Assembly: GCF_003918875.1 (NCBI RefSeq)
Contig: NW_025767308.1
Location: forward strand, 62,001 to 126,000
DNA from: Haliotis rubra
Taxonomy: Eukaryota
Reading direction: 5' to 3'
DNA: 64,000 nucleotides
Positions 99 through 55,949 of this stretch are shown here, piece after piece. A program made the position numbers and the translations under genes. The notes under the pieces are model-generated. The model was given only the letters and a program-made list of their open reading frames with translations. It did no database searches and was not told the origin of the DNA. The stretch's first letter is position 1. Each line of letters opens with the position of its first letter.

Positions 99-437
99 CA
101 AATGACTGACACTGTTGGTAACATGTCCTCACACACCCTTACCTACAACCACCAGCTTCTGTCCACATTGAGGTATGATGTCAGATACTCCATTATTCCC
201 ACAGGTGTACGTCAAATGACTGACACTGTGGGTAACATTTCCTCACATACTCTTACCTAGAACAACCAGCTTCTGTCCACATTGAGGTATGATGTCAGAT
301 ACTCCATTCCTCCCACAGGTGTAGGTCAAATGACTGACACTGTGGGTAACATTTCCTCACATACTCTTACCTAGAACAACCAGCTTCTGTCCACATTGAG
401 GTATGATGTCAGATACTCCATTATTCCCACAGGTGTA
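99..437 (-). repeat. 114-bp tandem repeat x3 spanning the 3' end and donor of the gene A V exon
   Basis: Units start at 99, 213 and 327; donor boundaries at 143, 257 and 371. Confidence 0.95.
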
Positions 438-706
438 GTTCCCAGCATCAGATTGGACAACACTACGGAGGTCAAAGGCCATGACCTTTGGGTCAGCAGT
501 TAGATTCCCGGTGTAGGTGACACGAGCTGTGTAGTTCCCTGCTACTTGGTGGTTATTGGCTATGTTGGCCCCTATTACTGCAGCTCCAGATGGACTGATG
601 ACAAACAGGGAAATGAATCCCTCTGGTACAGCTGGTACCTGCCACCTGAAGCTGGCTGTCTCAGACTCCCTCACTAACACAGGCCTGGCCAGCTGGGACT
701 GTACAC
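371..706 (-). CDS. Gene A V-like Ig exon (gene continues beyond left end of window)
   Basis: Acceptor tttccacag|GT at 706, donor CTAG|gtaag at 371; 336 nt, phase 1-1; D-x-G-x-Y-x-C motif (SDAGNYTCG), ends CGQKLVVL. Confidence 0.9.
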
Positions 707-31531: not shown

Positions 31532-32412
31532 TTAGGCATTTCCATGCTCAGGATCTGAAAAGTAGAGAACCAAGGGTAATGAAACGTACAAATATGATAT
31601 TAAGTGAACTTTTGACATGATACAAACGTATCATACTGGACCCAAAGAGAGGCATATATATGTTGTTGAAGGATTCAAGGAAACAGTTGATCGTTGAGGA
31701 TGTTTAAGATTTCAATCTCCAGTAGTGTCCCATGGTTTGTTTACCTTGAGAATGTGCCCCAGTGTTCTGGTATGTCGATGCCCTCAGAGATTCATAGGTC
31801 ACAGGGGGAGTTTTTGTCACGCCTTCATAGGTGCTTGTATCTGCTGCAGTATCCGCTGAAGATAGAATTCATTACATATTTAACAGCAAATACACATAAA
31901 AGCTTCCTTCGTTTCACTAGCACTATAGAGAGCTGACAGTAAATCCATGTATAAATTTGAGATTCCTCAATGCTGAGCATAAAACATCTACCTTTTGTAT
32001 TCTCATAAATCTTCAACTGTGTGTACTGTTGTTTTTCTGATTCCTCCCCCAAATTTGAATACTGCGCTGGAGCCGTGATCTGATCTGAAACACATTGTAT
32101 TGGCTTAGTGCAAACAGATCCAGAGATGGTTGTAATATCAACTAGAGTGAAACATCAAACAACCAGTACATACCTAGAGATGAGTATCCTTTGTTGTCCA
32201 TTTCCACAGGTTCAGGGTGGCTAGAACTACAAACAGCATCAGGTCAGTTTCGAATAATTGAAATAAAACAATCGAGCGATAAACCTTAGAATGAAATGTA
32301 ATACATGTATATTTTAGTTAACCTATTGTAAGTTACTACCTAGTCTCGTACTTTTACATGCAATATTTCATTGAACTATATTGACATATGGATTACCTTT
32401 TTCGTGCAGCTC
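31532..32412 (-). CDS. Gene D cytoplasmic exons
   Basis: GYSSL, YSNL-x8-YTQL, IYEN, STYEGV, VTYESL, DPEHGNA*. Confidence 0.8.
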
Positions 32413-32705
32413 CTGGAAAACACGAATAGTAAAAATGTCATGGAGTGTGAAAGACACAACAATCAAAAACGAAATGGAGAGAGAGAGACGGATAACTGTT
32501 TCTGTAAATTATTGTGGATCGAAGCTATAACCATGCATACATTAAATCACATTAACAGTGTAAATGTATTTACATCAATCAACATATGAAATTTTGAAAA
32601 AATAATAATTATCTTCGGCAGTGTCAAGGAACTTACATCTGGCATAACACCTACTGCCTTCCAAATAGTGTCCAATGATAAAACAACAGGAAATGAAGTA
32701 TGTAC

Positions 32706-32861
32706 CTTTTAGAATGTTTCCAACTCTGTACCCCTTTCTGTACAGCACCATTAGAACAATCCCTCCAATGAGCAGGGTAAGAAGAAAGGTTCCTACTGTC
32801 GCTCCTGCTGTTACCCCGGTACAATTACATGAAGCTCCAAGCCTTTGCTGGTCTGTTGGAT
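32706..32861 (-). CDS. Gene D transmembrane exon
   Basis: 156 nt; GVTAGATVGTFLLTLLIGGIVLMVLYRKG. Confidence 0.85.
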
Positions 32862-33888
32862 CTAAAATGTAATTTAAAAGATCATACAGACTGCTGCTGC
32901 AAAATCATTTGTCTGTGTGCCCAGGTAACACACAACGTTTTCTCAACGTTTTCGGAAGATTGGACATTTGTAACGTCATGATGTAACGTCATTTTATAAC
33001 GTTAATTCACACCGTTACAGCAACATTACATACATACGTTGACAAAACGTCTTGTATCGACTGTTACATCCCGTTATGATTCATCGTTTCTGAAACAGTT
33101 ATGCGACGTAAACTGTCTCTTTCCCGAAAATCGCAAGAACAAGAGCGTACATCGAATTATTCGTAATTTCTGCAGAAAACAAGACTGTAGTGCATTATTT
33201 ACCTATAAAACTTTGGGATTTCCATCCCATTAATATACTGAACGCACAGAAACGTAATTTCTTTCTGACAACCTTAATATGACGTCATGTGCAACGTTAT
33301 GGTATTTACACCGTTGTACATTTAAGATGAGGAACGATATGCATCGGGCTCCTCTTTACTTTATGATAACAACGTTTCTTACCACTTGGTGTCACGATAG
33401 AGTTTCTCGAAACCCGAAGGAACAAAGGTGTTCACTCGAAATTCACTTTGAGATTCGGTCTTCACTATTCAGCTATACAGTGCTACTCTTGCTACAGTAC
33501 AAACGGCGCAGGCTAAATTCCTAAGATGAGTACAGACTATAATACTCATTTTCAGTTTGCTGTCTGCAATATGCCAGTGACTTTGTCAATATTCGACCAA
33601 GCAATGCATTGACAAGATAAACAAGTCAAGCAAGTTCATCCAGTTCTCCAAGGGCTTCATTCCCAGCCTCATCACATCAAACCTCCACATAAATGTTTAC
33701 TGTAAATCCGAAGATTTGCGAAAAGATTCGTTTTAATATACGTTGATGGGCATACTAGTATTTACCCCTAATATCTGATAATGAAATTATGTTTACACTC
33801 AAATCGTTTCACGCTTTACATCAACTATACTACATAATTGTTTTTATTCAGCTATGTGGCCATTTAGGGTTCCCTTTGTTCTTCTTAC

Positions 33889-34183
33889 CACCAGCAGTCA
33901 CAGCTTCTGTCAATACATATCCATCAGAATCCCCGTAGTCATTTCTAGCTTGTAGTCGGAATATGTAAATCTCCTGGTGTAAGCCCGGTCACTTCAACAA
34001 CCATCATCTCGCCGGTGTCATCATAGGATTTATACACAGTCCACGTTCTTGTAGCAAACTGGAGATACTCAATGAGAAACGTCTGAGTGCGTCCACCATT
34101 AAACCCAGGCAGCCACGACAACCATACCGAGGACGTTGTTGCATTATCCAGATCTTGAAACTGTGTAGGTGTCTGTGGTGGTC
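33889..34183 (-). CDS. Gene D FN3 exon (2-nt deletion near 33971)
   Basis: 295 nt; WLPGFNGGRTQTF; frame shifts after GLTPG. Confidence 0.8.
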
Positions 34184-34363
34184 CTTGCAACAAAGTAAGA
34201 TAAAATAAGTAATGATTGCTATCATAAGTTGATGGGTTAAAAACCTCAAATGAAGGTTAAATGAAAACAAAACAGAAATAGAATGTCACCAGAGGAATAT
34301 GGTAAGCTTCACAGTAAATCTGAAATCATAACACACCAAGTTGTAATTCCAAAAGTAACACAC

Positions 34364-34660
34364 CTGCAGGCACAACACTGACTGTGTATGTCACTGAACT
34401 GCCCACACCATTGTCCACTGTCAGACTGTAGTCCCCGAAGTCTTGCTGTTGGAGGTTAGTAAGGTGTAGTCTGGCAGTGACTGAGATGTCTGAGACAGGG
34501 CTGGAGGAACCAGTGAGGTCCTGACTGGTGCTGATGGATCTACTCCAGGTGAATGTAGGAAGGGGGTAGGCCAGGACTGACACAGACACAGCCACGTCAC
34601 CACCCAGTCTAGAGGCGAACTTGAGTTGTTGGGACACTGAGTCATCAAGTCGAGGTGAAC
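34364..34660 (-). CDS. Gene D membrane-proximal Ig exon (lacks the B- and F-strand Cys)
   Basis: 297 nt; VSVLAYPLPTFTW...QDFGDYSLTVDN. Confidence 0.88.
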
Positions 34661-35108
34661 CTGGTTAAATGTAGAAAACAACATCCATAATGGCTCGGGG
34701 ACAGATACTAACCTGGTGACACAGGTTGAGAAAATGAACAAATTGACAGCTGACAATGTGACTGATTCAGTAGGTCAAGTAGCAATGTTAATTACGTACT
34801 AAGAAAACAAACAAGAACAGTGGACAGCTGGAAGTTATGCTTCTAAGATTTTCTGTTGAATTGTTTTTCATGAGCTTCTACTTTTCAGAAATAGCACATT
34901 ACATAGCAACTCCTTTATGAGAAGGATACCCGATGCATTTCATATTGCTCAATATAAATACGGAAGCATCTCCTTGTTGGATACAAACCAGATACAGACA
35001 AAGCAATTTAAACTATAAAACAACCATCACAGGACAACCATGCGAACGTATTTTCCAAACACAAACGTGTATCTGTACACATATTACATTTGTTGAAAAC
35101 CTACTCAC

Positions 35109-35383
35109 ATTTGACCACCTCCACGTCTGGGTGACAGGTGCCCCGATGTTGTTGGTGGCAGTACAGGAGTAGTTCCCTCTTTGTCTACAGTCTGCTGACT
35201 CCAGTCTGTATGTTGCTGACAGGGAGTTATCTGTCCTTGTCAGCTCCTCAGTGCCATTCAGGAGTGTGATTACTGACCTTGGATTACTGTCAATCTGACA
35301 TCTCAAGGTCACTGTATCAGACTCGTTAACTGTCACTGAGCCACTGTGAGAGTTGGCGGTAAACATGCTTATGTTAGCTGGGT
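35109..35383 (-). CDS. Gene D Ig exon (4 nt shorter than the gene C paralog)
   Basis: 275 nt versus 279; TLRCQIDSNP..GNYSC. Confidence 0.8.
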
Positions 35384-35564
35384 CTGAAAATAAGAACCAT
35401 TGCATCATTGATATGGTATTGGCTAAAATAAATGTCAACTGAACACTGAATTCAATGTGAAGTTATATGTTGAAAAGAAAACACATTAATTATCTAATCA
35501 GTGTACATGTATTATGGGTCATTGAAGCATCACTGTGCAACACGTCTATAATACACTGAATATC

Positions 35565-36335
35565 GACATTGACTTGTAACTGAACTGTCACCAGTGTAGA
35601 CTATATACTTACACTGAACATCAAACTGACTGTAACAACACTGTACTGTAACACTGTCACCAGTGTAGACTATATAGACTTACACTGAACATCACTGACT
35701 GTAACACTGTCACCAGCCAGACTATATACTTACACTGAACATCAACACTGACTGTACAGACTATATACTTACACTGAACATCAACACTGACTGTAACACT
35801 GTCACCAGATACTTACACTGAACATCAACACTGACTGTAACACTGTCACCAGTGTAGACTATATACTTACACTGAACATCAACACTGACTGTAACACTGT
35901 CACCAGTGTAGACTATATACTTACACTGAACATCAACACTGACTGTAACACTGTCACCAGTGTAGACTATATACTTACACTGAACATCAACACTGACTGT
36001 AACACTGTCACCAGTGTAGACTATATACTTACACTGAACATCAACACTGACTGTAACACTGTCACCAGTGTAGACTATATACTTACACTGAACATCAACA
36101 CTGACTGTAACACTGTCACCAGTGTAGACTATATACTTACACTGAACATCAACACTGACTGTAACACTGTCACCAGTGTAGACTATATACTTACACTGAA
36201 CATCAACACTGACTGTAACACTGTCACCAGTGTAGACTATATACTTACACTGAACATCAACACTGACTGTAACACTGTCACCAGTGTAGACTATATACTT
36301 ACACTGAACATCAACACTGACTGTAACACTGTCAC
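35565..36335 (-). repeat. 54-bp tandem repeat containing exon end and GTAAGT donor (10 regular plus ~4 degenerate copies)
   Basis: Donor boundaries every 54 nt from 36303 to 35817; further ones at 35773, 35734, 35684 and 35613. Confidence 0.95.
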
Positions 36336-36573
36336 TACTTCCGTGTGCATTATAAGGCTGACATCTGTAGGAGCCTGTCTTGGATCTGTCAGCTTGTCCC
36401 TGGAGCACGGCTCCACTGCTGAAAGCTGTTCCATTGTGTAACCACCTGTAGCTACATGCCGGTCTACAGAGGGCGGAGCACCTGATTGATGGAAGAGCCT
36501 GGTGTTCTGTCACAGTGTAGGAGGAGGAGGGAGGGCGGAGTCTGGAATTGGCGTGAGATCTGATAGGGGCCGT
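36303..36573 (-). CDS. Gene D Ig3 exon (frameshift in a C/T run near 36520-36540)
   Basis: YGP...IRCSALCRPACSYRW...GSYRC; 271 nt. Confidence 0.75.
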
Positions 36574-36930
36574 CTGGAATCAATGGTAATGTGGCACGCA
36601 TGATATGTGTTCGGTCGATAAAGTAGTTTAAGAGAAGATAAGACGTGATAATAAAGGTAACTGATGCTGCAGGGCTATCGACGACCCATTTACATGACCA
36701 GCTGACGATCATGATCGGTCGCACATGTCACACGTTTCATTGGGTGAGTACAAATTTTAGTATATTCCTAAACCACCGACAACAACGAAGATAAATACCA
36801 GTAACTCCTGTCAGCGTTTGACGCTTTCTTTCAAGGTTTTCATATATTGGGTCTTATGATTGTACAATTGCTGCCCATGTTAACTAATGATGGGTTTTAT
36901 ATGAATCAGTAATGCCCATGCTCTACTCAC

Positions 36931-37212
36931 ACTGAGGCTCCATGTGGTACACCTGGCTCCACTCGGACTCCAGACCCCGACTTTCTCTCGCTCTACATCT
37001 GTAGCTGTGACTGTCCAGGGAACTCACTGTGAAGGTGTAGGGGGAACCAGGAGAGGTAACTGTGATGTCAGTGTTGTCACGCTGCCAGGTGTAGGTCAAG
37101 GTCAGACCATGATCAGCTGGGACAGAGGTAGAGGTGGAGCTGCAGGTCAAGGTCATTTGCTGGTTGTAGACAGGTGTTGTTGACACTGGACGACCAGGTG
37201 TTGTTGGTTTAC
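36931..37212 (-). CDS. Gene D Ig2 exon
   Basis: 282 nt; closely similar to gene E exon 53869-54150. Confidence 0.9.
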
Positions 37213-38054
37213 CTGTGAAAATACATTTGCATTTCACACTGAAATATGTCCGATTGGACTTTAATCCAATTTGTTTTGATTTTCCAAAATATGTTTCTTG
37301 AGTTATTTCGAAACGTATATCTGTAACTTGTACATTTGCAGATGTTAAGCAACATTAAATTCGAGTCCCTGATGCCATGCATGAAACAATATGCAGTTTC
37401 CGGGAAATACACAAGGACAAAGTAGAATAATATTAGTTTCGTTGGTGGTATGTGTGGTTCATAAGTAAATGGAAGCGACGGAACCCGTTCTACATCCACA
37501 CAACATATTTGCTAATACCAGAGTCCATTGTACAATTATGACTATATCACGTGCATGTATTTATTTCATTCAGTAACGAATGTTTAGTTACAGGTTGTTT
37601 TCTGATTCTAACTGCATCACTTGACGATGCTAAATGGTCAGATTGGTTAGATAAAGCTTGAAATATAAAATTGGTGAATGAAAGAAAAGTAAATACACTG
37701 TACAAACATGTAGTATGAAAATTATGCGATGTAGTGCGATTACTAATGCTTGTCTGCAGCAGAAATACATGAGCGTAAATTTGCAGCAGATTACATTGCA
37801 GAAAGTACAAACAGTTACTTAAACTGTCAACTCCTTGAACAAGACCCACATTAGAAACATTAGCGTGACTACAAATTATTTTCTACTGAGGGTTCTAATC
37901 CACTCGTGGAACCTCTATGGGCTCGCCATATTGACAAAAACTTCATCAGCACACCTTTGTCAAGACCTTCCAAAGTTCAAGCAACCAGAGGAACGAAGCA
38001 GACAATGACACTAACAGGACATATGATTCCTCTTCAAACGGGACAAATAACAAA

Positions 38055-38056
<2 letters not shown>

Positions 38057-38115
<59 letters not shown>
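38057..38115. repeat. (CA)n(TA)n microsatellite
   Basis: Seen directly. Confidence 0.95.
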
Positions 38116-38149
38116 CTTAGGATATCTGGAGGAAAATTTCAAACATAAA

Positions 38150-40500
38150 ATCAGTCAAATTCTTGGGGAGGATGTTGCCCATTATTTCATGGATAACTGG
38201 AAAATATTTCTAGTCGACTTCTTCATGATTTGGCCATTTCTTTAGTAGAAACTAAATACATTTTACGAACTTTTAAATAGCATGGACGAAAATCTTGTTT
38301 TCACTATGGAGGCAGATGAAATGAAAACAGCTTTCTTGGACACAATAATCATCTAATTGGGGCGGAATTGGACACAGGTATCTTCTACAAACTTACTGAT
38401 ACGAAACAATATTAAAACTTCATATTTTGTCATCCGAGCCACACTAAAAGAAGTCTTCCATATAACCTGGCACAAAGAATATGTACAATGGATTCAAACC
38501 AGGACTCCAGCAATCAAAGGCTGAACTTAGGATGTTTTACTATTACGGGAATATCCAAAATCTCTTGTTGAAGAGGGAACCAATAAAGCGTTACAGCTTA
38601 ATAGACAATATCTTTTGGCAGGAGCGATGAAACAAACCAATGAGGAAAGAGTAATAGCTTTTGTATCTACTTAAAATCCGTTGAACCCAAATGTGTTCCA
38701 GAACAGTAAAACAAATATGTACATCTTAGAACAAGATGAAAAACTGAAATCAATGCTGAAATCTAGAAAATAATAAATATAGCAAAAGACAAAATCAGAA
38801 CTTGGAAAGATCCTAACAGAAGCCAAATTTATTTTTTAGAAACCCAGAATGTATCAAATCCTACTGTATCCAACAGAAGTAACTGTGGAACGTGTCGACA
38901 TATTGTTGAAGGACACTCTGTAACCAGATGTAACACGAGACACAGAGAATTTTATGCAAAACCGAATTTTGACTCTTCTTCCAAAAATATTATATATGTC
39001 ATAACATGCACACGGACTGTACTGAACAGCATACTGGCCAATCAGAAAATTTAAGAGCCCGGGTTCGTGTCTGTCAAGATCACAATTAGTGTAATATGTT
39101 TTGTTCTTTGTCTGAGGTGTGAGAAATTGGGAGTGAAAAGAGGCTAGCTGGAGCAGTGATGTAAGCGTTAAGCGAGTGTTGGGGTGTGCAGTATGAGAGC
39201 CATTGTATGTATCTGGGTAGTAAGCTTGGGGTTAATCAAGTAGCTTGGGGGCTATATAAGGACTGATTTGAAAGTTGTGAGTTGGCAGCCAGTTGGAATG
39301 TATGTGCGTGTCAGGTTGGCTGGTTTTCCTGGTTTTTCCTGAATCCTGGTGTGAGTATGATAATGTTATGTTATGTTTCAGTCAGAATATGACTATGAAT
39401 TATATATAGTAAAATTATTGCTATTTCACCTTAAAGCATGTAACTATAACTAAGGTGAAATATAGGTAATATTATTGCTGTGGTTAGTAATATGATGGAA
39501 TTGTGATCAGTATGTGACATTTTGAGAATGTCTCTAAGTTAGTATACTGGGGTAATGATGATACTCATTCAGCAGGTCACGTGTAATGTATAGTGGTAGT
39601 GTTGTGTATTAAGTGACTGTAAAACAGCCCTGTAAACATATCCTGTGTATGTGATCTATATATATATGTATATATATAGAAATATAGATAGTGTACATGT
39701 AAAGTCACCAAGTAAAGGGTGTGCTTTTTGTATCCAGTGTCGACCCTGACATGCCGCCCGTGGATGTGAAGTAACATCTGTGTATCTGGGGAGAGTGACG
39801 TGCCCCGTCAGTAAGGCTGTACCAACTGATCAACAGGAATCATATGGACATGCCGCCAAAGTATGTAGAGACTTACATGCAGGGGAAGGACCCCTAACCT
39901 ACCACCAAAGACCTGAACTGTCTGGAATCCCCACATGTGGTGACAAGAACATCGTCAGTGATTTATATAGCATGCAACTGATTTGTGCTTTTAATGAATT
40001 GCTTACATATTCCATCTTCCATGTACATGACATAATCATATGAATTGTTGTGTGTTTCTTTAAAAAGACAAGTGTGGTGTTGTGATATTTTGACTATTGA
40101 TGTGAGTATATGTGAATGGTGAAGTATGATGTGCTTGTTTGGGTGTGTAGGGGAAAGAGTGTGAGGGTGTTTGGTAGTGCGAGAATGAAGTTGTGATGCC
40201 AGCCTGTATTAACTATTGTAAATAGGGTAAATTTAGTTAATAAATTATATTAACTTTGAAATCTGGTTTTGTCTTTACTCTAGTATGTGACAGTGTCCAC
40301 AAATAACAAATTAAGTGTCCTGAAACCCGATGTATCCCACTGAGTGAACATCTATATGTCTGTGCGAAAGGAAACTATATTAAGTTTACAATATTTCCTT
40401 TTGATCAAGTTCATAATTCGGACAAAGTAAAACGAATTATAAAACAACGCTACTTCATAGATAAGTTCAAACCAATGTTAAATCATTGCAAGCTTTGACC
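38150..40500 (+). mobile_element. Degenerate Penelope-like retroelement (RT C-terminus plus GIY-YIG endonuclease)
   Basis: FTME..AFLD, FYKLTDTKQY..CHPSHTKRSLPYNLAQRIC, NCGTCRH, SKNIIYVITC..TGQSENLRARVRV|H; contains stops and frameshifts. Confidence 0.8.
39072..40292 (+). mobile_element. Solo LTR inserted in the Penelope relic
   Basis: TGTCA...TGACA termini; 5-bp TSD GTGTC (39067-39071 / 40293-40297); TATA-like ~39253 and AATAAA ~40239. Confidence 0.8.
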
Positions 40501-41161
40501 TTGTCACTCTAGAATGTGGTCCTCATTTTGATGTCACAATATATTTGTAATGATGTCATACTGTAACTGCTTCAATGAAACATGTTGGAGGAAACATCAT
40601 TCTGCTCTGAGAGCGTCTGTATTTTCCACACTACTTGCCTTGTTGTGTTTCTTTGCATCTCATAAATATAAGCCAACACTTCATTCAGATGCATCAATAT
40701 TCTAAAAGTCTGAATTCTCCTCTTTACCTCCCATGTAGCCAATCGGTAATATAGCGGGATTGTTTATAGTCGTATGTTGCTTATGTAAACTGTTTAATCA
40801 TCTATATATTAATTGCAGCACCACTGTACCCAAAGATCCCCATTTAGGCAAAATAATCAAGATCAACAATAATAATGAATGCATCAAGTGCTGAAACTAT
40901 TAATCTGTAGTACATTCTGCTCTTTGGTCCATGCATTGCGTGAACATGGATATGTGAAGTTCGGAGCAAAGTATACATGTGATCAATTAGACCAGGAGTG
41001 AAAGGTCATATCGAATTCTAGCACACGATGTTTACATTTTGAGCATATCCACGACATGAAACACTTACTTACTGCATTAGTATAGTTTTATCTGAATATG
41101 CATATTGAATATATAAAGGTCAGTCCACACATCCATAAACAACAACTAAACAGCCACTCAC

Positions 41162-41506
41162 CCAGGACAACAAGTTTCTGTCCACAGTTCTGTATCACAT
41201 CAGTGGCGGTCCCTCCTCCATTCCCACACGTGTATGTCCCTGCATCAGATGTCTGGATGTTGCTGAGGGTGAAGGTGACGTTCCTGACTGCTATGTTCCC
41301 CTGGTACACCAGTCTACCGCTGTAGCCTGGGAGTGGGATGAAATTCCCAGAACCTGTCACTATGAACACAGTGCCACCAGCAGGACTGACAACATAGAAA
41401 CTGGCTCCTGTCCCCAGACCTCCCTGTGGAATCTCCCAGTTGAACCTGGCTGTGTCAGACACTGCAGACAACACTGGACTGGCACTAGTTGCACCTGATA
41501 CAACAC
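41162..41506 (-). CDS. Gene D V-like exon
   Basis: 345 nt; ARFNWEIP...SDAGTYTCG...CGQKLVVL. Confidence 0.9.
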
Positions 41507-42288: not shown

Positions 42289-42331
42289 CTGCTATCACAT
42301 ATAATATTGCCGCTTGGGCGGTCTTCGTCAT
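42289..42331 (-). CDS. Gene D signal-peptide exon
   Basis: MTKTAQAAILYVIA+G; 43 nt, phase 1; upstream acceptor context resembles that of the gene E leader. Confidence 0.65.
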
Positions 42332-45300: not shown

Positions 45301-47458
45301 TATCGTTTTGCCCATTTATTTTGGAGAAGATAAGCAAAAATCTGCAAGCTGATAATGTATAAAGAATTATCTAAGTGGATAATCAATTGATCTAATACAG
45401 TTCAAGGAAGACTGAAAAGTAATAAATATACTCTGTGTCTACATGTACTATCTTCCCTACATATACCACAGTTTTCTTTAGCAGGATGTTCATTCATGAG
45501 AAAGTCACTTTGTCTCATATATAAATTACTGCTTCTTTTCAAGAGTTATTTAAGATTAAATGGGATTGCGCACATGGATTGAAATCAGGAACAGCATTTG
45601 CAAATATCCTTGTATACGTTCGTAAGGAATATTTATTCAAGCTTTCACTAGCTCAATCCCGGTGACAGATAAGTTAAGATATTGCGAAATATATAAAATA
45701 ACTGTAATGACTCTGATTAGCAAGACATACACGATGCTTAGGATAGATATATGGGCAAGCCATAGTTCAATACACACAATATCGTTCTATTTTGTTCCCA
45801 TGTGTATGACTCGATCACCAACGTTAAAAACAACAAGAAACTGGTTTGGTGACTGTGCATGCATGTTTTGATAGACTCTGATAGGAAAATATACCAACGG
45901 GACCTTTTGAGATTATCAGCAAGTTATACATTATGTATATGGATGTCAGTTGACCAGAACTGTAATGGGCTAAATGTCTGGTCTTCGATATTGAAGGATA
46001 GATTTCGTCTGTAAACAACGAAACATTAATACCATTGACAGTTTGTCCCACTGGTATGTTGTAAGCTCCATGTTTCTAATGTGCGTACGGTCGTGCTGGA
46101 AATGAAACCCGTAAAGAAAGGAACCCACAGGAATCCACCATATTGCTGTCTTCAGAGCAATAACGTCATCTGTCAGTATGTACAGTTCTGTTGCCCAATG
46201 TAGAGCCCTGTTTGAATGCTATATTATCTGAATATCATACAATATTACACACGATTTGACTTTACTGTTACCTCTATCCATTACATTAGCACCTAATCTA
46301 AAAAATCCCGATTGCGCTCTTTCAACTGAAGAACCATGCACAAGCAGTCTCTTAACTAAAGCGTTATTATCAACCCACGAAGTTTTTTGTCAGAAATAAG
46401 AACGAAACAAGATACATGCATGCACGAAAAGAGGTGAAAGTTTTATTTGAGCTTGCCTAATTTGCACTTAGTTTCAGCATTAACTGAAATATACATGATA
46501 TAACATACATGTAGATATATACATTTGTATAGCACAAGTTTGTTTACAAAAAGTGCCTACAAACACTGCCACGTTCAACTCAATGAGGTCTACGCTCCAC
46601 TCTGTGCCCACACAACTGCATATACAACACATAAATGACCAAGGTACACATTGACGTGTTATGTCTGGAGCTGAAACTGGTGTCGAACCAATAAGAACAT
46701 AGTGCAATAACATGTTTTTTCTAACATATATCCAGTGTTTAGGACACATTAAGATCGTACGACTGCGGCATCTAAGACACCTGCAAATCAAACATGTCTC
46801 TTTTATGTTACTTAAGTATCTAACACAAGTTCAAAAGGAGTCTGAATAACTGACAATGCACATATTTTCTATTCGCTTACTCATTACTTGTCTAGTAAAT
46901 GCACTTGTTCATCATTAGTTCTTACCTGGTGTATATCCATAAACATACACGAGGAACGTTGAGAATGTATTCAGTGTCCATTTAAACAAACTTAGGTACT
47001 GAAGCAACACCCTCCTTTATAGAGAACGTCAGATGTGCACCCTCATTAAGTGCGTAAAGTACATCACGTTTTATTCGTGTCAGCAATTTCGATCAGTTCC
47101 GTATGTAGTCATAAGTCAAATCTGAAACAAAAGTAGCACTATATTCATACACAGCACGGGACTCTATCCTGATAATGGCTGAATGGTTTACATCAAAAGT
47201 GTTCTAGCTTCCAGTTTTCTCACTATGGTTTATGTGAAGCATTTAGTCTGGTTAAGGATATGTCTTCAGGGTGTGACGACAGGACATAAGACAGTGTCCA
47301 CCAGGCTGTGATAAGAGGCAGCAGCATATTGTCACTAATAGTGTTACGCTAACGCAGAACTGAGGACAGAGGGAACCTATTCAGTTTAGGATTTCTACTG
47401 TGAGAAGTTCATGTTTTGTATTTTGTTGCTCTTGTACACGATTCTGCATTAGCCATAC

Positions 47459-47822
47459 CTCTGCCATCAGCATCCACATACATGCCAAGTTGGTGAAGTC
47501 TGTAGGGTCTTGATCTCTCTGCAATCTCGTCGTAGGTGTTGCCAATGTCTGGAAAGTATAATAACTTTTCAAAGACAATCGAGGGTGAGCAGTGTCGAAG
47601 AACATCAACAATGTTTACTTCCAGCAATAAACATAGAAGAGAATCATGGTAAAAGTTCAGCCGTTAGGTTTAGAGAGCTAGTTCATGTTTTGTATTTTGT
47701 TGTTCTTGTAAACGATTCTGCATTAGCCATACCTCTGCCATGAGCATTCACATACATGCCAAGTTGGTGAAGTCTGTAGGGTCTTGATCTGTCCGCAATC
47801 TCGTCGTAGGTGTTGTCAATGT
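47459..47822 (-). CDS. Gene E tandemly duplicated 90-nt cytoplasmic exon
   Basis: DIDNTYDEIADRSRPYRLHQLGMYVNAHGR and DIGNTYDEIAERSRPYRLHQLGMYVDADGR; both tttccag|...|gtatgg. Confidence 0.75.
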
Positions 47823-50800
47823 CTGGAAAGTGTAATAACGTTTACATAGTGAATGCAGGACTGCAGATAAACAATCAGAGACAATCGAGGCATCAAGGGT
47901 GAGCAGTGTCGACGAACATCAACAATGTATACTTCCAGCAATAAACATAGAAGATAATCCCAACTAAACAGGCATTTTCTTTAGAAATTCGACAAAGATA
48001 GAGCTTATGGGAGACATCAATATCACATTATCTGACATTGAAGATGCAAATCTCTGAGCTCGCAATCTTTTCTCTTTATCATATGCTTTATTTGGAAAAC
48101 TCATGTACCTTGGTAATACGGCTCTTGGTCTCGCTTATCTTGGATCCGCGACCTTCAGCAGAAACGTCAATAATGTCAAGAGGGCATGCAATTCACACAC
48201 ACATACGCTTGCAGTCGCAAAAAGTGTCACACACAAGCATACACGCACACACACACACATGTGTGCATATAAGGAGACAGAGAATTAGGTTAAATGGCAA
48301 AAGCTGTGTTTAGCTATAACCGCTTACAAGTACAACTATGAAAGGAAACTTACGTATTCGGCATGTCTGTTGTGCCTGTGGAGATACCAAAGATGACGTC
48401 ATGTCAAACTTTGTCGATAGAAGTTAAATATCTTAGCAGTGCAAGTTTGCTGTTTACTCACGTATAGTGCCTAACAAAAAAGTACACCAGTACGTTACTG
48501 TTACCGTATCGCGAAGAGGCAACATTGCTGCATAACGTGCTGAATTACATTGCTGTGCATAATTATGTTGCCTTTTGCACAGTGAGTGAGTGAGTGAGTT
48601 AGAATTTAACGTCACCTCGGCAATATTTCAGCCATATTGTGACGAGAAATGTTTTACATAAACAATAATTAAAGTTGCTAAATAATCAGTCATCGAAGGA
48701 CTGTAAAATAACTAGAGTATCACAGATGAAGTCTAAAACTAGCATGAACATGTAAAACTATTTTATTTACGAAGACAATACAATATAAAAACAGGCTATA
48801 GATCGCCAACAACTGAAGGTAGATCACCATACTAGGAACCATGGGGACTTACATTACTTTTTCTCCCTGCATGGACCCTAGCTGGATTTACACCATCCCT
48901 TCAGCTGTTGGCGATTGTAGGAAAATTTAGCCACAAATTAAAATGACAAGAATACTACGTTTAAAAACACAGGACGTAAAAAAATTACTTTGAAAGGTTT
49001 TGGGACTTACGTACCCTCTCAGGAGGACAATAATTTTACGCTAGCCTTTTGCACAGCATACATTATACCTACCTGTACTCTGCAATGCACATGCACATTC
49101 GCATCTCGTCTTCATCAATACGACAACGACGACCACAACAACGACAACCACAAACAACACACCACCTGCCACTTCAGCGATAAATCCAGTTTGTGAAGGG
49201 GGCGACCGAGCTAAAACAGAAATACCTCACGTTTCCACAACGTTACACAACAAGGAGTGCGTAATGCACACAGACATCGTTTGGAGTAAAAGAAAATATA
49301 GTAGGGTGTTTGAAAAGTACACTCTTTACTCTAAATATCTGCTCGCACAATGTATGGGTCGAACGTATTGGGCTTCAATGGTCGTATTTTCATGCGTATC
49401 ATTTACATTCTGTTGTGTGGCAAATTCAGTTAGGAACTACTTCTCCATAACCGGCCTGATGACATCAAGATGCAATTAAGGTGAATGGCCAATTGTTCAT
49501 GTTGTCGTACTCAGCAATATTCCATCTACAGTTGGATCTATATCAGAAAGTAAATAATGTCTTGTCTTCAATTAAGTCACCTCACTCAACATGCTTGAGA
49601 TGCTTGGCACCTGTGGCATATTCTCAAGTGTTCTCGAGGTTTCGTGATTTGTTAGCTGCCCCGCCATGGTGACATCAGTGACAACTATAAAGCCAAGGGA
49701 GGTTTTACACACATTCCTTATTGTCCAAAGGTCAAAATCCTGCTTTTGGCATCCAAAGCCAGTAAGCAAAACGATTTTATGATAACATCCATGCCGAACG
49801 TTCTGAGAGGTTAACTTTCAGTGTCATAGTGTATGTCAGTAAGCATAAAATGAAAACCATTTCACACCACAGCTAGCTGCAAGATTGTTGATGCAATGTT
49901 AACACATTCACTTAGGTATGGTTATATTAGGTTAAATTAGATTTAGTTTTAATTAGCTAATATCTGTCGACGCTTGATGATTTCTACACCAAATGTGTTT
50001 AAACACATTTTGACAGCTGACACTTTCATTTAGTCATCGAAGGTAAGAGCACAAAAACACAATTGCATTTCTCTGAAGTTACACCTCCACAACACTATAT
50101 GTCACCACAGATGTCCCCACACAAGGACTGAAGGTGTCGATAGCTGTACACACATCCAGTATTTTAACAATGATACTTACACTGTACATCCACTGTCACC
50201 TGCACAGCGTCAGATATCTACACACACAAGGACTGAAGTTGTCGATAGCTGTACACACATAAGTCCAGTATGCTACCAATATGGTACTTACACTGTACAT
50301 CCACTGTCACATGCACAGAGTCAGATATCTACACACACAAGGACTGAAGTTGTCAATAGCTGTACACACACCCAGTATTCTAACAATGATACTTACACTG
50401 TACATCCACTGACACCTCCATAGAGGCAGATCTCACTACAGATGTCCCCACACAAGGACTGAAGTTGTCGATAGCTGTACACACATAAGTCCAGTATTCT
50501 AACAATATGGTATTTACATTGTACAACCACTGTCGTCTTTACAGAGTCAGATCTCACTACAGATGTCCCCAAACAAGGACTGAAGCTGTCAATAGCTGTA
50601 CACACATAAGTCCAGTATGCTACCAATATGGTACTTACACTGTACATCCACTGTCGTCTCTACAGAGGAAGATGTCACTACAGCTGTCCCTACTTTAGGA
50701 CCGAGGGTGTTAGTGGCCGCAACAGACACAGAAGTACCGTCTGGCATACAAAAAATATGCATTGACCTTTCCTTTGCTTGCTACACTGAAGGAACAACCT

Positions 50801-53800: not shown

Positions 53801-55949
53801 GTCTGTTCAAACTGACTGGAGATTTAGATGAGTATGGTAGGAATGAGACTTGTGCTTCCAGTACTCACACTGAGGCTCCATGTTGTACATCTGGCTCCAA
53901 TCTGACTCCAGGCCCTGACTTTCTCTCGCTCTACATCTGTAGTTGTGACTGTCCCGGGAACTCACGGTGAATGTATAGGTTGGACCAATGGTATTAACTG
54001 TGATGCTATCGTTGTCACGCTGCCAAGTGTAAGTCAAGACCAGACCATGGTCAGCTGGGACAGAGGTAGAGGTGGAGTTGCAGGTCAAGGTCACTTGCTG
54101 GTTGTAGACAGGTGTTGTTGACACTGGACGACCAGGTGTTGTGGGTTTACCTTTTACAGCGATAAATGTCTTTGAGTTTAACGTCTCCAGTCTATGTGGG
54201 GACGGTCACCATAACCATGTTAACAAGTGCAGATCCCCTATGTACTACGAATTCCAAACAACCCTCACATTACAACGACTGTAAATATATTCAATGAGAA
54301 CTCAGCTTAATTGTAACTTCGTGTTTTCAGGGTTCCTTGATAACTGTTCTTTGACCTTATTTGTTTGCATCATCGTTATCGCCTTAACCTGCTCAGAATT
54401 CACTGCCACTTTTTGAACTGCCACACCACGTATGAATAGAAATCAGTAAGCTGAGTGACGTTGTATTATGCATCAATGCGCCTCTGCGATACGAAAACAC
54501 GAAATATGCAGTGATTTGTTTCTAACGTGGAGCAGACACCATGTATATTACAACTCGTTGTCTTAAAATGTATCCAATTTGCTTTCTTATCTTTGTAAGG
54601 TAAATGGTATTTGATTGACACTCATGTGGTAATCACTGTCTAAAAATCCCAGTACATGACTGCCAGGAGCTACATCCGAATCATTCAGTTAGAATGCAGA
54701 AATACATGACGCCCAAATAGGCAACACGATAAAAGTATTTGTTCCCCACTGTAATCAAATTGAAGATTAAGCTAAATATGCCTGAATCAAACAGACCCAA
54801 TTTCCGCATTCCCTTTGGTTCCCAAAATGTCAATGTCAATCTCAAGTATGTCACTAATATGCCTACGAGCATCAGTTTGGCTACTGAGTGGCCGGCTTCT
54901 CGTCTGATGGAAAATACCAGTATAGTTTCACCTTCAATTTTCAAAAACTAACAAATGATGAACACAAAACTCTCTGATGAACAGTGAAGTATAGTTCCAT
55001 TACTTCATTATCAACACCAAGGACGTAATTCACTTCAAAAAATTCCTTTTCGTGTCCACGAGGAAATATATTCTTCCGCGAGACAGTTAGCAGCTGCCTC
55101 TGTGTGTGACCAGATTCACATTAGGTTACACATGCTGAATGATAGGTCATACATCATATATATTGTACTGAAATAGTGATTTATTCATAGTAATGTCAAC
55201 AATATGGAGAGAAGTAATATACATGTCTCTCCATAATATTTATTGACTCTGACATCCATACATGCACATACGTAACTAACCTTTATGTATCGAATTGCTA
55301 TCTGGGTTGAGTACATACCGACAGTTGGTGCTGCTTAAATATAATCTATATAAATTCAATATCGACTTACCCAGTACAACAAGTTTCTGTCCACAGTTGT
55401 GTATAACATTGTATACAGCCCCAGCCCCACACGTGTATGTCCCTGCATCAGATGTCTGGATGTTGCTCATGGTGAAGGTGACGTTCCTAGATGTTCTGTT
55501 TCCCTGAAACCCCAGTCTATTGCCGTAAGATTCATATGGGATTAACAGGCCAGAACTCGTCAATATGAAAACACCAATCCCAGCAGGATTGACGGTGAAG
55601 TAAACAGTCCCAGGCCCCAGACTTCCGGGTGGAATCTCCCAGCTGAACCTGGCAGTCTCCGACACCTTAGTCAGCACTGGCCTGACAACTGGTCCACCTG
55701 AAGAACCACCTGCAACATATGTGTCTCCAACATCATGCCATTCCATGCCACCTTGCCCGATGTAATGTAAATCTCAACACCAAAATAGTTGTCTTGCCTG
55801 ATGTAATGTAATCTCAACACCAAAATAGATGTCCAGTAATATGTTATGTGTAATTGTTTTCAAAGAGATGTTGATTCAAATGCGACAGGTTTCTCCTTCT
55901 TTGCAGACTTACTTGCAATCACAGACAGGATGACAGCATAATACAACAT
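47459..55949 (-). CDS. Gene E: short IgSF receptor (leader, V, Ig, Thr/Ser/Val stalk mini-exons, TM, distinct tail); last exon unresolved
   Basis: Exons 55913-55949, 55371-55709, 53869-54150, 51185-51277, 50639-50740, 49073-49210, 48462-48470, 48354-48375, 48109-48152, 47733-47822, 47459-47548; all phases join in frame. Confidence 0.72.
48583..49040 (-). mobile_element. Dispersed repeat copy (uninterrupted version of 29018-29620)
   Basis: Direct similarity to 29018-29620. Confidence 0.75.
49073..49210 (-). CDS. Gene E transmembrane exon
   Basis: 138 nt; GFIAEVAGGVLFVVVVVVVVVVVLMKTR; acceptor ttctgttttag, donor gtaggt. Confidence 0.75.
49860..51640 (-). repeat. ~540-bp segmental repeat with nested ~105-121-bp exon-end repeats; contains stalk mini-exons 51185-51277 and 50639-50740
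   Basis: Similar intron blocks at ~49860, ~50820 and ~51360; extra donor boundaries at 50518, 50397, 50292 and 50181. Confidence 0.8.
51672..51866. repeat. ~62-bp tandem repeat x3
   Basis: ggcacg..ga.tta.a..aggacag...gagtgcaaccacc recurs three times. Confidence 0.85.
53869..54150 (-). CDS. Gene E Ig2 exon
   Basis: 282 nt; VTLTCNSTS..YTW..NYRCRARE. Confidence 0.9.
55371..55709 (-). CDS. Gene E V-like exon
   Basis: 339 nt; ARFSWEIP...SDAGTYTCG...CGQKLVVL. Confidence 0.9.
55913..55949 (-). CDS. Gene E signal-peptide exon
   Basis: MLYYAVILSVIA; 37 nt, phase 1; donor gtaagt. Confidence 0.75.

What the first reader, a model, noticed from the sequence alone, without database searches (positions are those of the whole stretch)
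41162..41506. Non-canonical V domain: B-strand Cys replaced by Trp, with a likely F-G disulfide closing a variable loop (genes A, D, E)
All three domains read AxFxWxxP where LxC is expected and show no C-strand Trp. They keep DAGxYTC and add a conserved G-strand Cys (CGQKLVVL); these are their only two Cys. The enclosed loop varies in sequence and length: NNGVSDIIPQ, NGGGTATDVIQN, AGAVYNVIHN. Inference: an F-G disulfide replaces the canonical B-F bond and presents a CDR3-like loop.
Basis: partly seen in the sequence, partly recalled or inferred. Interest (0 to 1): 0.7.

Follow-up and report, generated by a model that had tools for sequence, protein, structure and literature searches.

The report
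Abalone V domain with rewired core
Three abalone receptor genes start with an antibody-like V domain that has a tryptophan in place of one of the two usual core cysteines and a new cysteine on the last strand, and this undescribed variant is conserved across snails.

Summary
Window 41162-41506 (minus strand) is a complete phase-1/phase-1 exon of a Haliotis gene. It has two paralogues in the window, at 371-706 and 55371-55709.

- **Motif:** each copy has one Trp at the B-strand Cys position, no C-strand Trp, and exactly two Cys, in DAGxYTC and CGQKLVVL.
- **Fold:** AlphaFold2 with a 42-sequence alignment gives pLDDT 88.7 and a nine-strand V-set fold. The best structural matches are nectin-1, CD200 and Necl-4 at Z about 12.
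- **Distribution:** this is a molluscan domain family, not a quirk of three genes. Of 48 full-length domains, 41 are W/C/C and 4 (Bulinus) are F/C/C. Three bivalve domains lack both Cys, and none has only one. This co-occurrence supports an F-G disulfide.
- **Limit:** the Cys-Cys distance could not be measured because the tools return no model coordinates.
- **Loop:** the "CDR3-like" claim holds only in part. The loop varies (9-14 residues between the Cys, dN/dS about 1.0), but no more than the C'C''/C''D and DE loops.
- **Context:** gene D continues as four Ig exons, FN3, a transmembrane segment and a tail with ITAM-like and ITIM motifs.
- **Expression:** RNA-seq of related abalones covers only the exons and shows the V-to-Ig2 splice.

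The closest precedent is domain 1 of Hydractinia Alr proteins. The scan holds only sibling notes on this same window, nothing on other DNA.

The parts
41162..41506 (-). Gene D V exon (the finding): 345 nt, phase 1/1, encoding the W-type V-set domain
   Evidence: Translation, splice sites, length and Cys/Trp counts. RNA-seq depth is confined to the exon and the V-to-Ig2 joint is seen.
41436..41438 (-). Codon TGG = Trp23, at the position of the canonical B-strand Cys
   Evidence: Read directly. The profile aligned to pIgR D1 places W on the B-strand Cys. AF2 strand B is residues 19-24.
41226..41228 (-). Codon TGT = Cys93, the retained canonical F-strand Cys in DAGTYTC
   Evidence: Nearly invariant in alignment A2.
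41187..41225 (-). F-G loop between the two Cys (GNGGGTATDVIQN), variable at its tip
41184..41186 (-). Codon TGT = Cys107, the extra G-strand Cys in CGQKLVVL
   Evidence: Nearly invariant, and lost together with Cys93 in the bivalve relatives.
42289..42331 (-). Gene D leader exon (MTKTAQAAILYVIA, then a split Gly codon)
   Evidence: Similar to the leaders of P0001, P0003 and P0007. RNA reads carry loose ends at about 41509 that lead into a leader-like sequence.
31725..37212 (-). Rest of gene D: Ig2 (about 36932-37212), Ig3 (about 36300-36513), Ig4 (35124-35381), Ig5 (34371-34658), FN3 (33872-34193), transmembrane exon (32707-32862), and tail exons with YSSL-x8-YSNL-x8-YTQL and VTYESL
   Evidence: tblastn of P0152 and P0007, translations, Ig2 exon start.
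55371..55709 (-). Gene E V exon, a W-type paralogue 61% identical to D, loop GAGAVYNVIHN
   Evidence: It is 92% identical to H. rubra XP_046545512 (P0006).
55913..55949 (-). Gene E leader exon (MLYYAVILSVIA)
371..706 (-). Gene A V exon, a W-type paralogue 41% identical to D, loop GNNGVSDIIPQ; the rest of the gene lies off the window

Best explanation
The exon encodes the membrane-distal domain of a type I receptor in an abalone multigene cluster. The receptor layout is leader, W-type V domain, four Ig domains, FN3, a transmembrane segment and a tail with ITAM-like and ITIM motifs. The domain is a true V-set Ig fold whose core 'pin' (Cys23-Trp41-Cys104) has been rewired. A Trp on strand B replaces Cys23, and the C-strand Trp is gone; I infer the B-strand Trp fills the space Trp41 normally occupies. 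The retained F-strand Cys pairs with a new Cys at the start of the G strand, where ordinary V domains have the FGXG bulge. This gives a within-sheet staple at the base of the F-G hairpin. The salt bridge (Arg64-Asp87) and the tyrosine corner (D-x-G-x-Y-x-C) are kept. The membrane-distal loops BC, C'C'', DE and FG change fastest between paralogues, so the tip is the likely ligand-contact surface, and the tail motifs suggest tyrosine-based signalling. Shown: the sequence motif, exon structure, splicing in close relatives, the predicted fold, and family-wide conservation with joint loss of the two Cys. Inferred: the disulfide itself, the packing role of the Trp, ligand binding and signalling.
For: Exon and motif. 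V-set fold: AF2 pLDDT 75 with 5 sequences and 88.7 (pTM 0.82) with 42 sequences, nine strands including C' and C''. Foldseek gives antibody V domains at TM 0.65-0.7 and E about 1e-6. VIA-align gives nectin-1 3alp Z 12.2, CD200 4bfi Z 12.2, Necl-4 Z 12.1, MPZ, TCR delta, CD48 and CD58. W on the B-strand Cys. Family: 426 hits at E<=1e-3; 48 domains span both positions, of which 41 are W/C/C, 4 are F/C/C, 3 have neither Cys and 0 have one Cys. Taxa: four Haliotis species, Nucella lapillus and Bulinus truncatus; the Cys-less forms are in the bivalves Tegillarca and Sinanodonta. R64, D87, G89, Y91, W23, C93, C107, G108 and L111 are invariant or nearly so. Selection: among six D-group exons dN/dS is 0.40 in strands against 0.84 in loops, 1.0 in the FG loop and 0.93 in C'C''/C''D. 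Expression: two RNA-seq runs cover only the exon bins, with zero depth in the 3.9-kb intron, and reads join the V exon to the Ig2 exon within 1-2 nt of the predicted sites. A 3.5-kb transcript contig encodes a full 840-aa family member. Tail motifs. Ig2 has only its canonical Cys pair, so no partner is left for an interdomain bond.
Against: The Cys-Cys distance was not measured, because the tools return no coordinates. The DSSP string (F 89-95, G 103-113) fits a register that puts Cys107 opposite Cys93 only if residues 105-106 form a two-residue bulge. A plain hairpin register would put the two Cys two rungs apart, which is too far to bond. The joint loss of both Cys is seen only in bivalve proteins, so it may be one or two evolutionary events rather than many. 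RNA reads are 90-99% identical, none at 99% or more in the two true RNA runs, so they come from related species or paralogues, not demonstrably from this copy. No functional data exist for any family member.
Confidence: 0.75

Rival explanations
1. The fold and the Trp replacement are as described, but the two Cys do not bond each other. They stay reduced, bind something, or form intermolecular bonds that dimerise the receptor.
For: No geometry could be measured. The simplest hairpin register read from the DSSP strings places the Cys diagonally, two rungs apart.
Against: The domain has exactly two Cys in 45 of 48 cases and both are lost together in the other three. Tandem copies within one protein each carry their own pair (P0003, P0004, P0005). 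A conserved pair of extracellular Cys at the base of one hairpin is the normal signature of an intradomain bond (established knowledge of secreted proteins). Alignment of KLxVL with the canonical G strand puts Cys107 opposite Cys93 (inference).
Confidence: 0.12
2. The F-G loop is not a specialised CDR3-like recognition loop. Its variation is only the relaxed constraint usual for surface loops, and the disulfide is purely a stabiliser that compensates for the lost B-F bond.
For: Loop entropy in the D group is 0.94 bits, against 1.09-1.31 for C'C'', C'', C''D and DE. dN/dS is 1.0 in FG, 0.93 in C'C''/C''D and 3.0 in DE, the last on only 4 codons. In the A group the loop length is fixed at 11. 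G94 and the I/V at position 104 inside the 'loop' are conserved.
Against: Length between the Cys ranges from 9 to 14 across the family. Between neighbours D and E the loop is the most diverged segment (47.6% nt identity) and is flanked by segments of 96.5% and 91.7% identity. dN/dS near 1 in loops against 0.4 in strands also fits diversifying pressure averaged with constraint.
Confidence: 0.5
3. The exon is a decaying or non-functional V-like relic, and the loss of the canonical Cys and Trp is degeneration.
For: Pfam V-set scores are weak: D 24.8 bits (below the cut-off of 26), E 28.6, A no hit. Tandem duplicated exon ends and other debris occur in the cluster.
Against: The frame is open, AG/GT sites are intact and a leader exon is present. 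Strands evolve at dN/dS 0.40. The motif is conserved across gastropod orders. RNA-seq shows exon-only coverage and splicing. The AF2 model is confident.
Confidence: 0.03

Closest known systems
Canonical V-set Ig domain (Pfam PF07686; e.g. nectin, CD200, MPZ, antibody and TCR V domains)
   Same: Nine-strand A'BCC'C''DEFG sandwich. Arg-Asp salt bridge, tyrosine corner D-x-G-x-Y-x-C, retained F-strand Cys, one phase-1 exon per domain, and the G strand encoded in the same exon.
   Different: The B-strand Cys is Trp (Phe in Bulinus). The C-strand Trp is absent. The FGXG bulge motif is replaced by C-G-Q, with a conserved extra Cys. The Pfam score hovers around the cut-off.
Hydractinia Alr (allorecognition) domain 1 V-set domains (PMC9546547)
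   Same: In those V-set domains the pin is also lost. Cys23 is replaced by Trp, Phe or Tyr and Trp41 is absent. The proteins have Ig domains, an Fn3-like domain, a transmembrane segment and ITAM or ITIM tails, lie in a multigene cluster, and have within-sheet disulfides predicted in other domains. The bivalve relatives found here (W on strand B, no Cys) have the same core state.
   Different: [quoted passage not shown] The gastropod domains keep Cys104 and add a G-strand partner. Sequence homology between the two families was not tested here.
Disulfide-less V domains of the CD2/CD58/CD48/SLAM family and CEACAM N domains
   Same: V-set fold without the B-F bond. CD48, CD58 and NTB-A appear among the structural matches at Z about 11.
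   Different: Those domains lack both Cys and have no compensating F-G bond or B-strand Trp signature (from general knowledge, not tested here).
Siglec V-set domains
   Same: A V-set domain at the tip of a chain of Ig domains with ITIM tails, carrying an unconventional within-sheet disulfide (general knowledge).
   Different: The Siglec bond links strands B and E and there is an extra interdomain bond. Here the proposed bond is F-G and Ig2 has no spare Cys.

Membership tests
V-set Ig domain (PF07686) | Nine-strand sandwich with C' and C'' strands | tested here: met
   AF2 DSSP gives strands at 11-13, 19-24, 36-39, 45-49, 55-57, 65-67/70, 75-80, 89-95 and 103-113. V domains match at Z 11-12 over about 100 residues.
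V-set Ig domain (PF07686) | Pin: Cys23 (B), Trp41 (C), Cys104 (F) | tested here: not met
   Position 23 is Trp and there is no Trp in strand C (FYVV). Only the F-strand Cys is kept.
V-set Ig domain (PF07686) | Arg-Asp salt bridge and tyrosine corner (D-x-G/A-x-Y-x-C) | tested here: met
   D87 and Y91 are invariant; R64 and G89 are at least 90% conserved in 42 sequences. This is by sequence only.
V-set Ig domain (PF07686) | Score above the Pfam gathering threshold (26 bits) | tested here: inconclusive
   E copy 28.6 bits, D copy 24.8 bits, A copy no V-set hit.
Alr-type pin-less V-set (Hydractinia Alr domain 1) | Aromatic residue at Cys23 and no Trp41 | tested here: met
   W in 44 and F in 4 of the 48 domains; no C-strand Trp. 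The feature is as described in PMC9546547.
Alr-type pin-less V-set (Hydractinia Alr domain 1) | Cys104 replaced by a hydrophobic residue (no disulfide in domain 1) | tested here: not met
   Gastropod domains keep Cys at that position and add a G-strand Cys. Only the bivalve relatives (A, Y or L) fit.
Alr-type pin-less V-set (Hydractinia Alr domain 1) | Detectable sequence or profile homology to Alr domain 1 | not tested
ITAM/ITIM immune-type receptor | Yxx[LI]-x(6-9)-Yxx[LI] and [ILVS]xYxx[ILV] motifs in a cytoplasmic tail after a transmembrane segment | tested here: met
   Gene D tail exons read YSSL-x8-YSNL-x8-YTQL and VTYESL after a hydrophobic transmembrane exon. Phosphorylation and signalling are untested.
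Rearranging antigen-receptor V region | V and J encoded apart and joined by recombination | tested here: not met
   The F strand, loop and G strand lie in one germline exon with ordinary AG/GT sites.

The most novel reading that the evidence does not exclude
The B-strand aromatic, pin-less V domain is an ancient invertebrate V-set lineage shared by cnidarian Alr allorecognition receptors and molluscan V-Ig-FN3-ITAM/ITIM receptors. Gastropods would then have added an F-G disulfide that, together with the B-strand Trp, rebuilds a permuted Cys-Cys-Trp pin. The clustered, loop-diversifying abalone genes would act as self/non-self or pathogen-recognition receptors.
Probability: 0.2. Interest if true: 0.75.

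Novelty: new variant of a known kind. Interest (0 to 1): 0.55.

Why it matters
The Cys-Trp-Cys pin is treated as the hallmark of V-type Ig domains, and annotation tools rely on it. The authors of the Hydractinia Alr study wrote that they knew of no other V-set or I-set domain lacking both the disulfide and the Trp. This molluscan family is a second case. It also points to a specific way of compensating: Trp moved to strand B and the disulfide moved to F-G. Because Pfam V-set scores these domains only around its cut-off, such domains can be missed or mislabelled; NCBI gives family members unrelated automatic names such as turtle-, DSCAM-, hemicentin-, CEACAM5-, sax-3- or titin-like. Recognising the signature W...DxGxYxC-x(9-14)-CGQxLxV would let a large clustered receptor family with ITAM/ITIM tails be catalogued in abalone and other gastropods, including schistosome-vector snails (Bulinus). 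It also gives protein engineers a natural example of a V domain stabilised without the B-F bond.

Tried and rejected
- **Cys-Cys distance:** Structure prediction returns only pLDDT and DSSP, and /data holds no model files, so the distance could not be measured. I argued from strand register only.
- **Solved structure with a G-strand Cys at this place:** phmmer and profile searches of the PDB align only up to the F strand and show no such case.
- **Pfam family specific to this domain:** none exists; only generic Ig, V-set and I-set hits appear.
- **Link to the Biomphalaria PTC2/GRC polymorphic transmembrane clusters:** rejected. That paper says the PTC2 genes have no known domains, whereas the Bulinus family members have clear Ig and FN3 domains.
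- **Literature on abalone or mollusc receptors of this type:** three searches found nothing specific.
- **Word-based protein search:** it was limited by its length filter and found only 2 hits each time. Taxa of the Logan and ENA members (P0017, P0093, P0097, P0117 and others) remain unknown.
- **P0003 look-up by identity:** failed, because only the longest isoform is on record; P0152 was used instead.
- **Full-length search of gene D:** Exons were compared one by one.
- **Assembly gaps:** the 158 N in the window were left untouched.
- **Pseudogene reading:** considered and rejected (see rival explanations).

Full report
**What is in the sequence.** The finding lies on the minus strand. Translating 41150-41504 in the right frame gives VVSGATSASPVLSAVSDTARFNWEIPQGGLGTGASFYVVSPAGGTVFIVTGSGNFIPLPGYSGRLVYQGNIAVRNVTFTLSNIQTSDAGTYTCGNGGGTATDVIQNCGQKLVVLG. 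The exon is bounded by ctacAG|GT at 41506 and CTGG|GTGAGT at 41162. tblastn finds two paralogous exons on the same strand. With their splice sites they are A = 371-706 and E = 55371-55709. Leader exons lie at 42289-42331 for D and 55913-55949 for E.

**Organism and gene context.** The closest database proteins are from Haliotis: P0001 from H. rufescens at 81% and P0002 from H. rubra at 76%. Gene E is 92-97% identical, exon by exon, to H. rubra XP_046545512.
- Exon-by-exon comparison with P0152 and P0007 shows that gene D continues downstream with Ig2 (about 36932-37212), Ig3, Ig4, Ig5, an FN3 domain, a transmembrane exon and three tail exons.
- The tail exons read YSSL-x8-YSNL-x8-YTQL (ITAM-like) and VTYESL (ITIM).
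- Other genes of the same cluster have ordinary V exons with the Cys...Trp...Cys pin, for example 23921-24301. The Trp form is therefore a distinct domain type, not a general property of abalone Ig domains.
All comparisons were made exon by exon.

**Fold.** Pfam sees only a weak V-set match: D 24.8 bits, E 28.6 bits, cut-off 26, and A no hit.
- AlphaFold2 with the 5-sequence alignment gave pLDDT 75.
- With a 42-sequence family alignment (A2) it gave pLDDT 88.7 and pTM 0.82, with nine strands including C' and C''.
- Foldseek matches antibody V domains at TM 0.65-0.7 and E about 1e-6.
- The Foldseek-independent VIA-align search ranks nectin-1 (3alp, Z 12.2, rmsd 2.8 A over 99 residues), CD200, Necl-4, nectin-3, MPZ, VH and TCR delta. 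The disulfide-less CD48, CD58 and NTB-A follow at Z about 11.
- So the refutation condition 'the fold is not Ig-like' fails.
- The family profile aligned to pIgR domain 1 puts the Trp on the B-strand Cys.

**This is a family, not three genes.** A profile search of 1.84 billion representatives returned 426 proteins at E<=1e-3.
- Among the best 150 proteins, 48 domains span both the B-strand and the G-strand positions. Of these, 41 are W/C/C, 4 are F/C/C and 3 are W with neither Cys. None has a single Cys.
- W/C/C members come from H. rubra, H. rufescens, H. cracherodii, H. asinina and Nucella lapillus. The F/C/C members are four Bulinus truncatus proteins, three of them on one contig.
- The Cys-less forms are in the bivalves Tegillarca granosa and Sinanodonta woodiana.
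- The domain often occurs twice or three times in tandem (P0003, P0004, P0005, P0012, P0032), each copy with its own Cys pair.
- The architecture of a W-type V domain, several Ig domains, FN3 and a transmembrane segment is shared by the Haliotis, Nucella and Bulinus proteins.
- No Pfam family is specific to this domain, and three literature searches found no description of it.

**The disulfide.** Direct measurement was impossible, because the tools return no coordinates. The indirect evidence is as follows.
- The two Cys are the only ones in the domain.
- They are conserved across gastropod orders and absent together in bivalves, never singly.
- Ig2 has only its own canonical pair, so no interdomain partner is left over.

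On geometry, aligning K-L-x-V-L with the canonical G strand puts Cys107 at the FGXG bulge, directly across from the F-strand Cys. The DSSP strings (F 89-95, G 103-113) fit this register only if residues 105-106, often Pro-x in the family, form a two-residue bulge. A plain hairpin register would put the Cys two rungs apart, which is too far to bond. I put the F-G bond at about 0.8. The joint loss may represent only one or two evolutionary events.

**Is the loop CDR3-like?** The number of residues between the Cys ranges from 9 to 14.
- In eight close paralogues and orthologues (the D group) the loop entropy is 0.94 bits, but C'C'', C'', C''D and DE reach 1.09-1.31.
- On codon alignments of six D-group exons, built from loci L001-L004 and the window, dN/dS is 0.40 in strands, 0.57 in BC, 0.93 in C'C''/C''D, 3.0 in DE (only 4 codons), 1.0 in FG and 0.84 in all loops together.
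- Between the neighbours D and E, the segment for residues 75-93 is 96.5% identical in DNA (pS 0.04). The rest is 63-73% identical and the FG loop only 47.6%.
- That mosaic suggests a short gene-conversion tract next to a replaced loop.
- The loop is therefore variable, but it is one of several variable distal loops rather than a uniquely hypervariable one.

**Expression.** Two true RNA-seq runs (X23, X24) cover only the bins that hold the Ig2 and V exons. Depth is zero across the 3.9-kb intron.
- Reads and contigs join 37210 to 41161, within 1-2 nt of the predicted 37212|41162 junction. Loose ends at about 41509 lead into a leader-like sequence.
- These reads are 90-99% identical, so they come from related species or paralogues.
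- Only one 134-nt contig of a run of uncertain type matches this copy exactly.
- A 3.5-kb transcript contig encodes a complete 840-aa family member.

**Comparison with what is known.** The nearest precedent is domain 1 of the Hydractinia Alr proteins.
- There, Cys23 is replaced by Trp, Phe or Tyr, Trp41 is lost and Cys104 becomes hydrophobic.
- Those proteins also carry Fn3-like domains and ITAM or ITIM tails in a gene cluster.
- Their authors knew of no other V-set or I-set domain lacking both the disulfide and the Trp.
- The bivalve relatives found here share that core state. The gastropod domains differ by keeping Cys104 and adding a G-strand partner.
- Whether the two families are homologous was not tested.
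- A suspected link to the Biomphalaria PTC2 transmembrane clusters was checked and dropped.

**Verdict.** The fold, the Trp replacement and the family-level Cys pairing are supported. The bond geometry is untested and the 'CDR3-like' claim is overstated. This is a new, undescribed variant of the V-set domain that is conserved in molluscs. Interest is moderate.

Noticed in passing
window 135-440 (minus strand): The last ~70 nt of the gene A V exon (TYTCG[N/R]NGVSDIIPQCGQKLVV[L/V]G) plus the first ~46 nt of its intron are tandemly triplicated. The period is about 118 nt and the copies are 96-97% identical. Each copy keeps its own GT donor, and read-through meets an in-frame stop. This looks like slippage or unequal crossing-over, not a diversity device.
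   Followed up: partly
window 35761-36300 (minus strand): After the gene D Ig3 exon, the exon end plus the intron start (DSVTVSVDVQ|CKYIVYTG) is repeated about ten times in tandem. It is the same kind of exon-boundary duplication as at gene A.
   Followed up: no
window 41226-41282 compared with 55435-55491 (V exons D and E, residues 75-93): This 57-nt stretch is 96.5% identical between D and E (pS 0.04), while the rest of the exons is 63-73% identical (pS 0.34-0.45). This suggests a short gene-conversion tract ending at the F-strand Cys.
   Followed up: partly
window 23921-24301 and 10684-10965 (minus strand): Other genes of the same cluster (C and B) carry V-like exons with the ordinary Cys...Trp...Cys pin. 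Canonical and Trp-type V domains therefore sit side by side in one receptor cluster.
   Followed up: no
window 47445-47832 (minus strand): The gene E tail, as in P0006, contains a repeated unit (DIGNTYDEIAERSRPYRLHQLGMYV...) encoded by duplicated exons. Its tyrosine motifs differ from those of gene D.
   Followed up: no
L001 10219-10560 and 11297-11635: An H. rubra paralogue (P0003/P0152) has two Trp-type V exons in tandem about 700 bp apart, both about 82% identical to D. This shows recent exon duplication inside a gene.
   Followed up: partly
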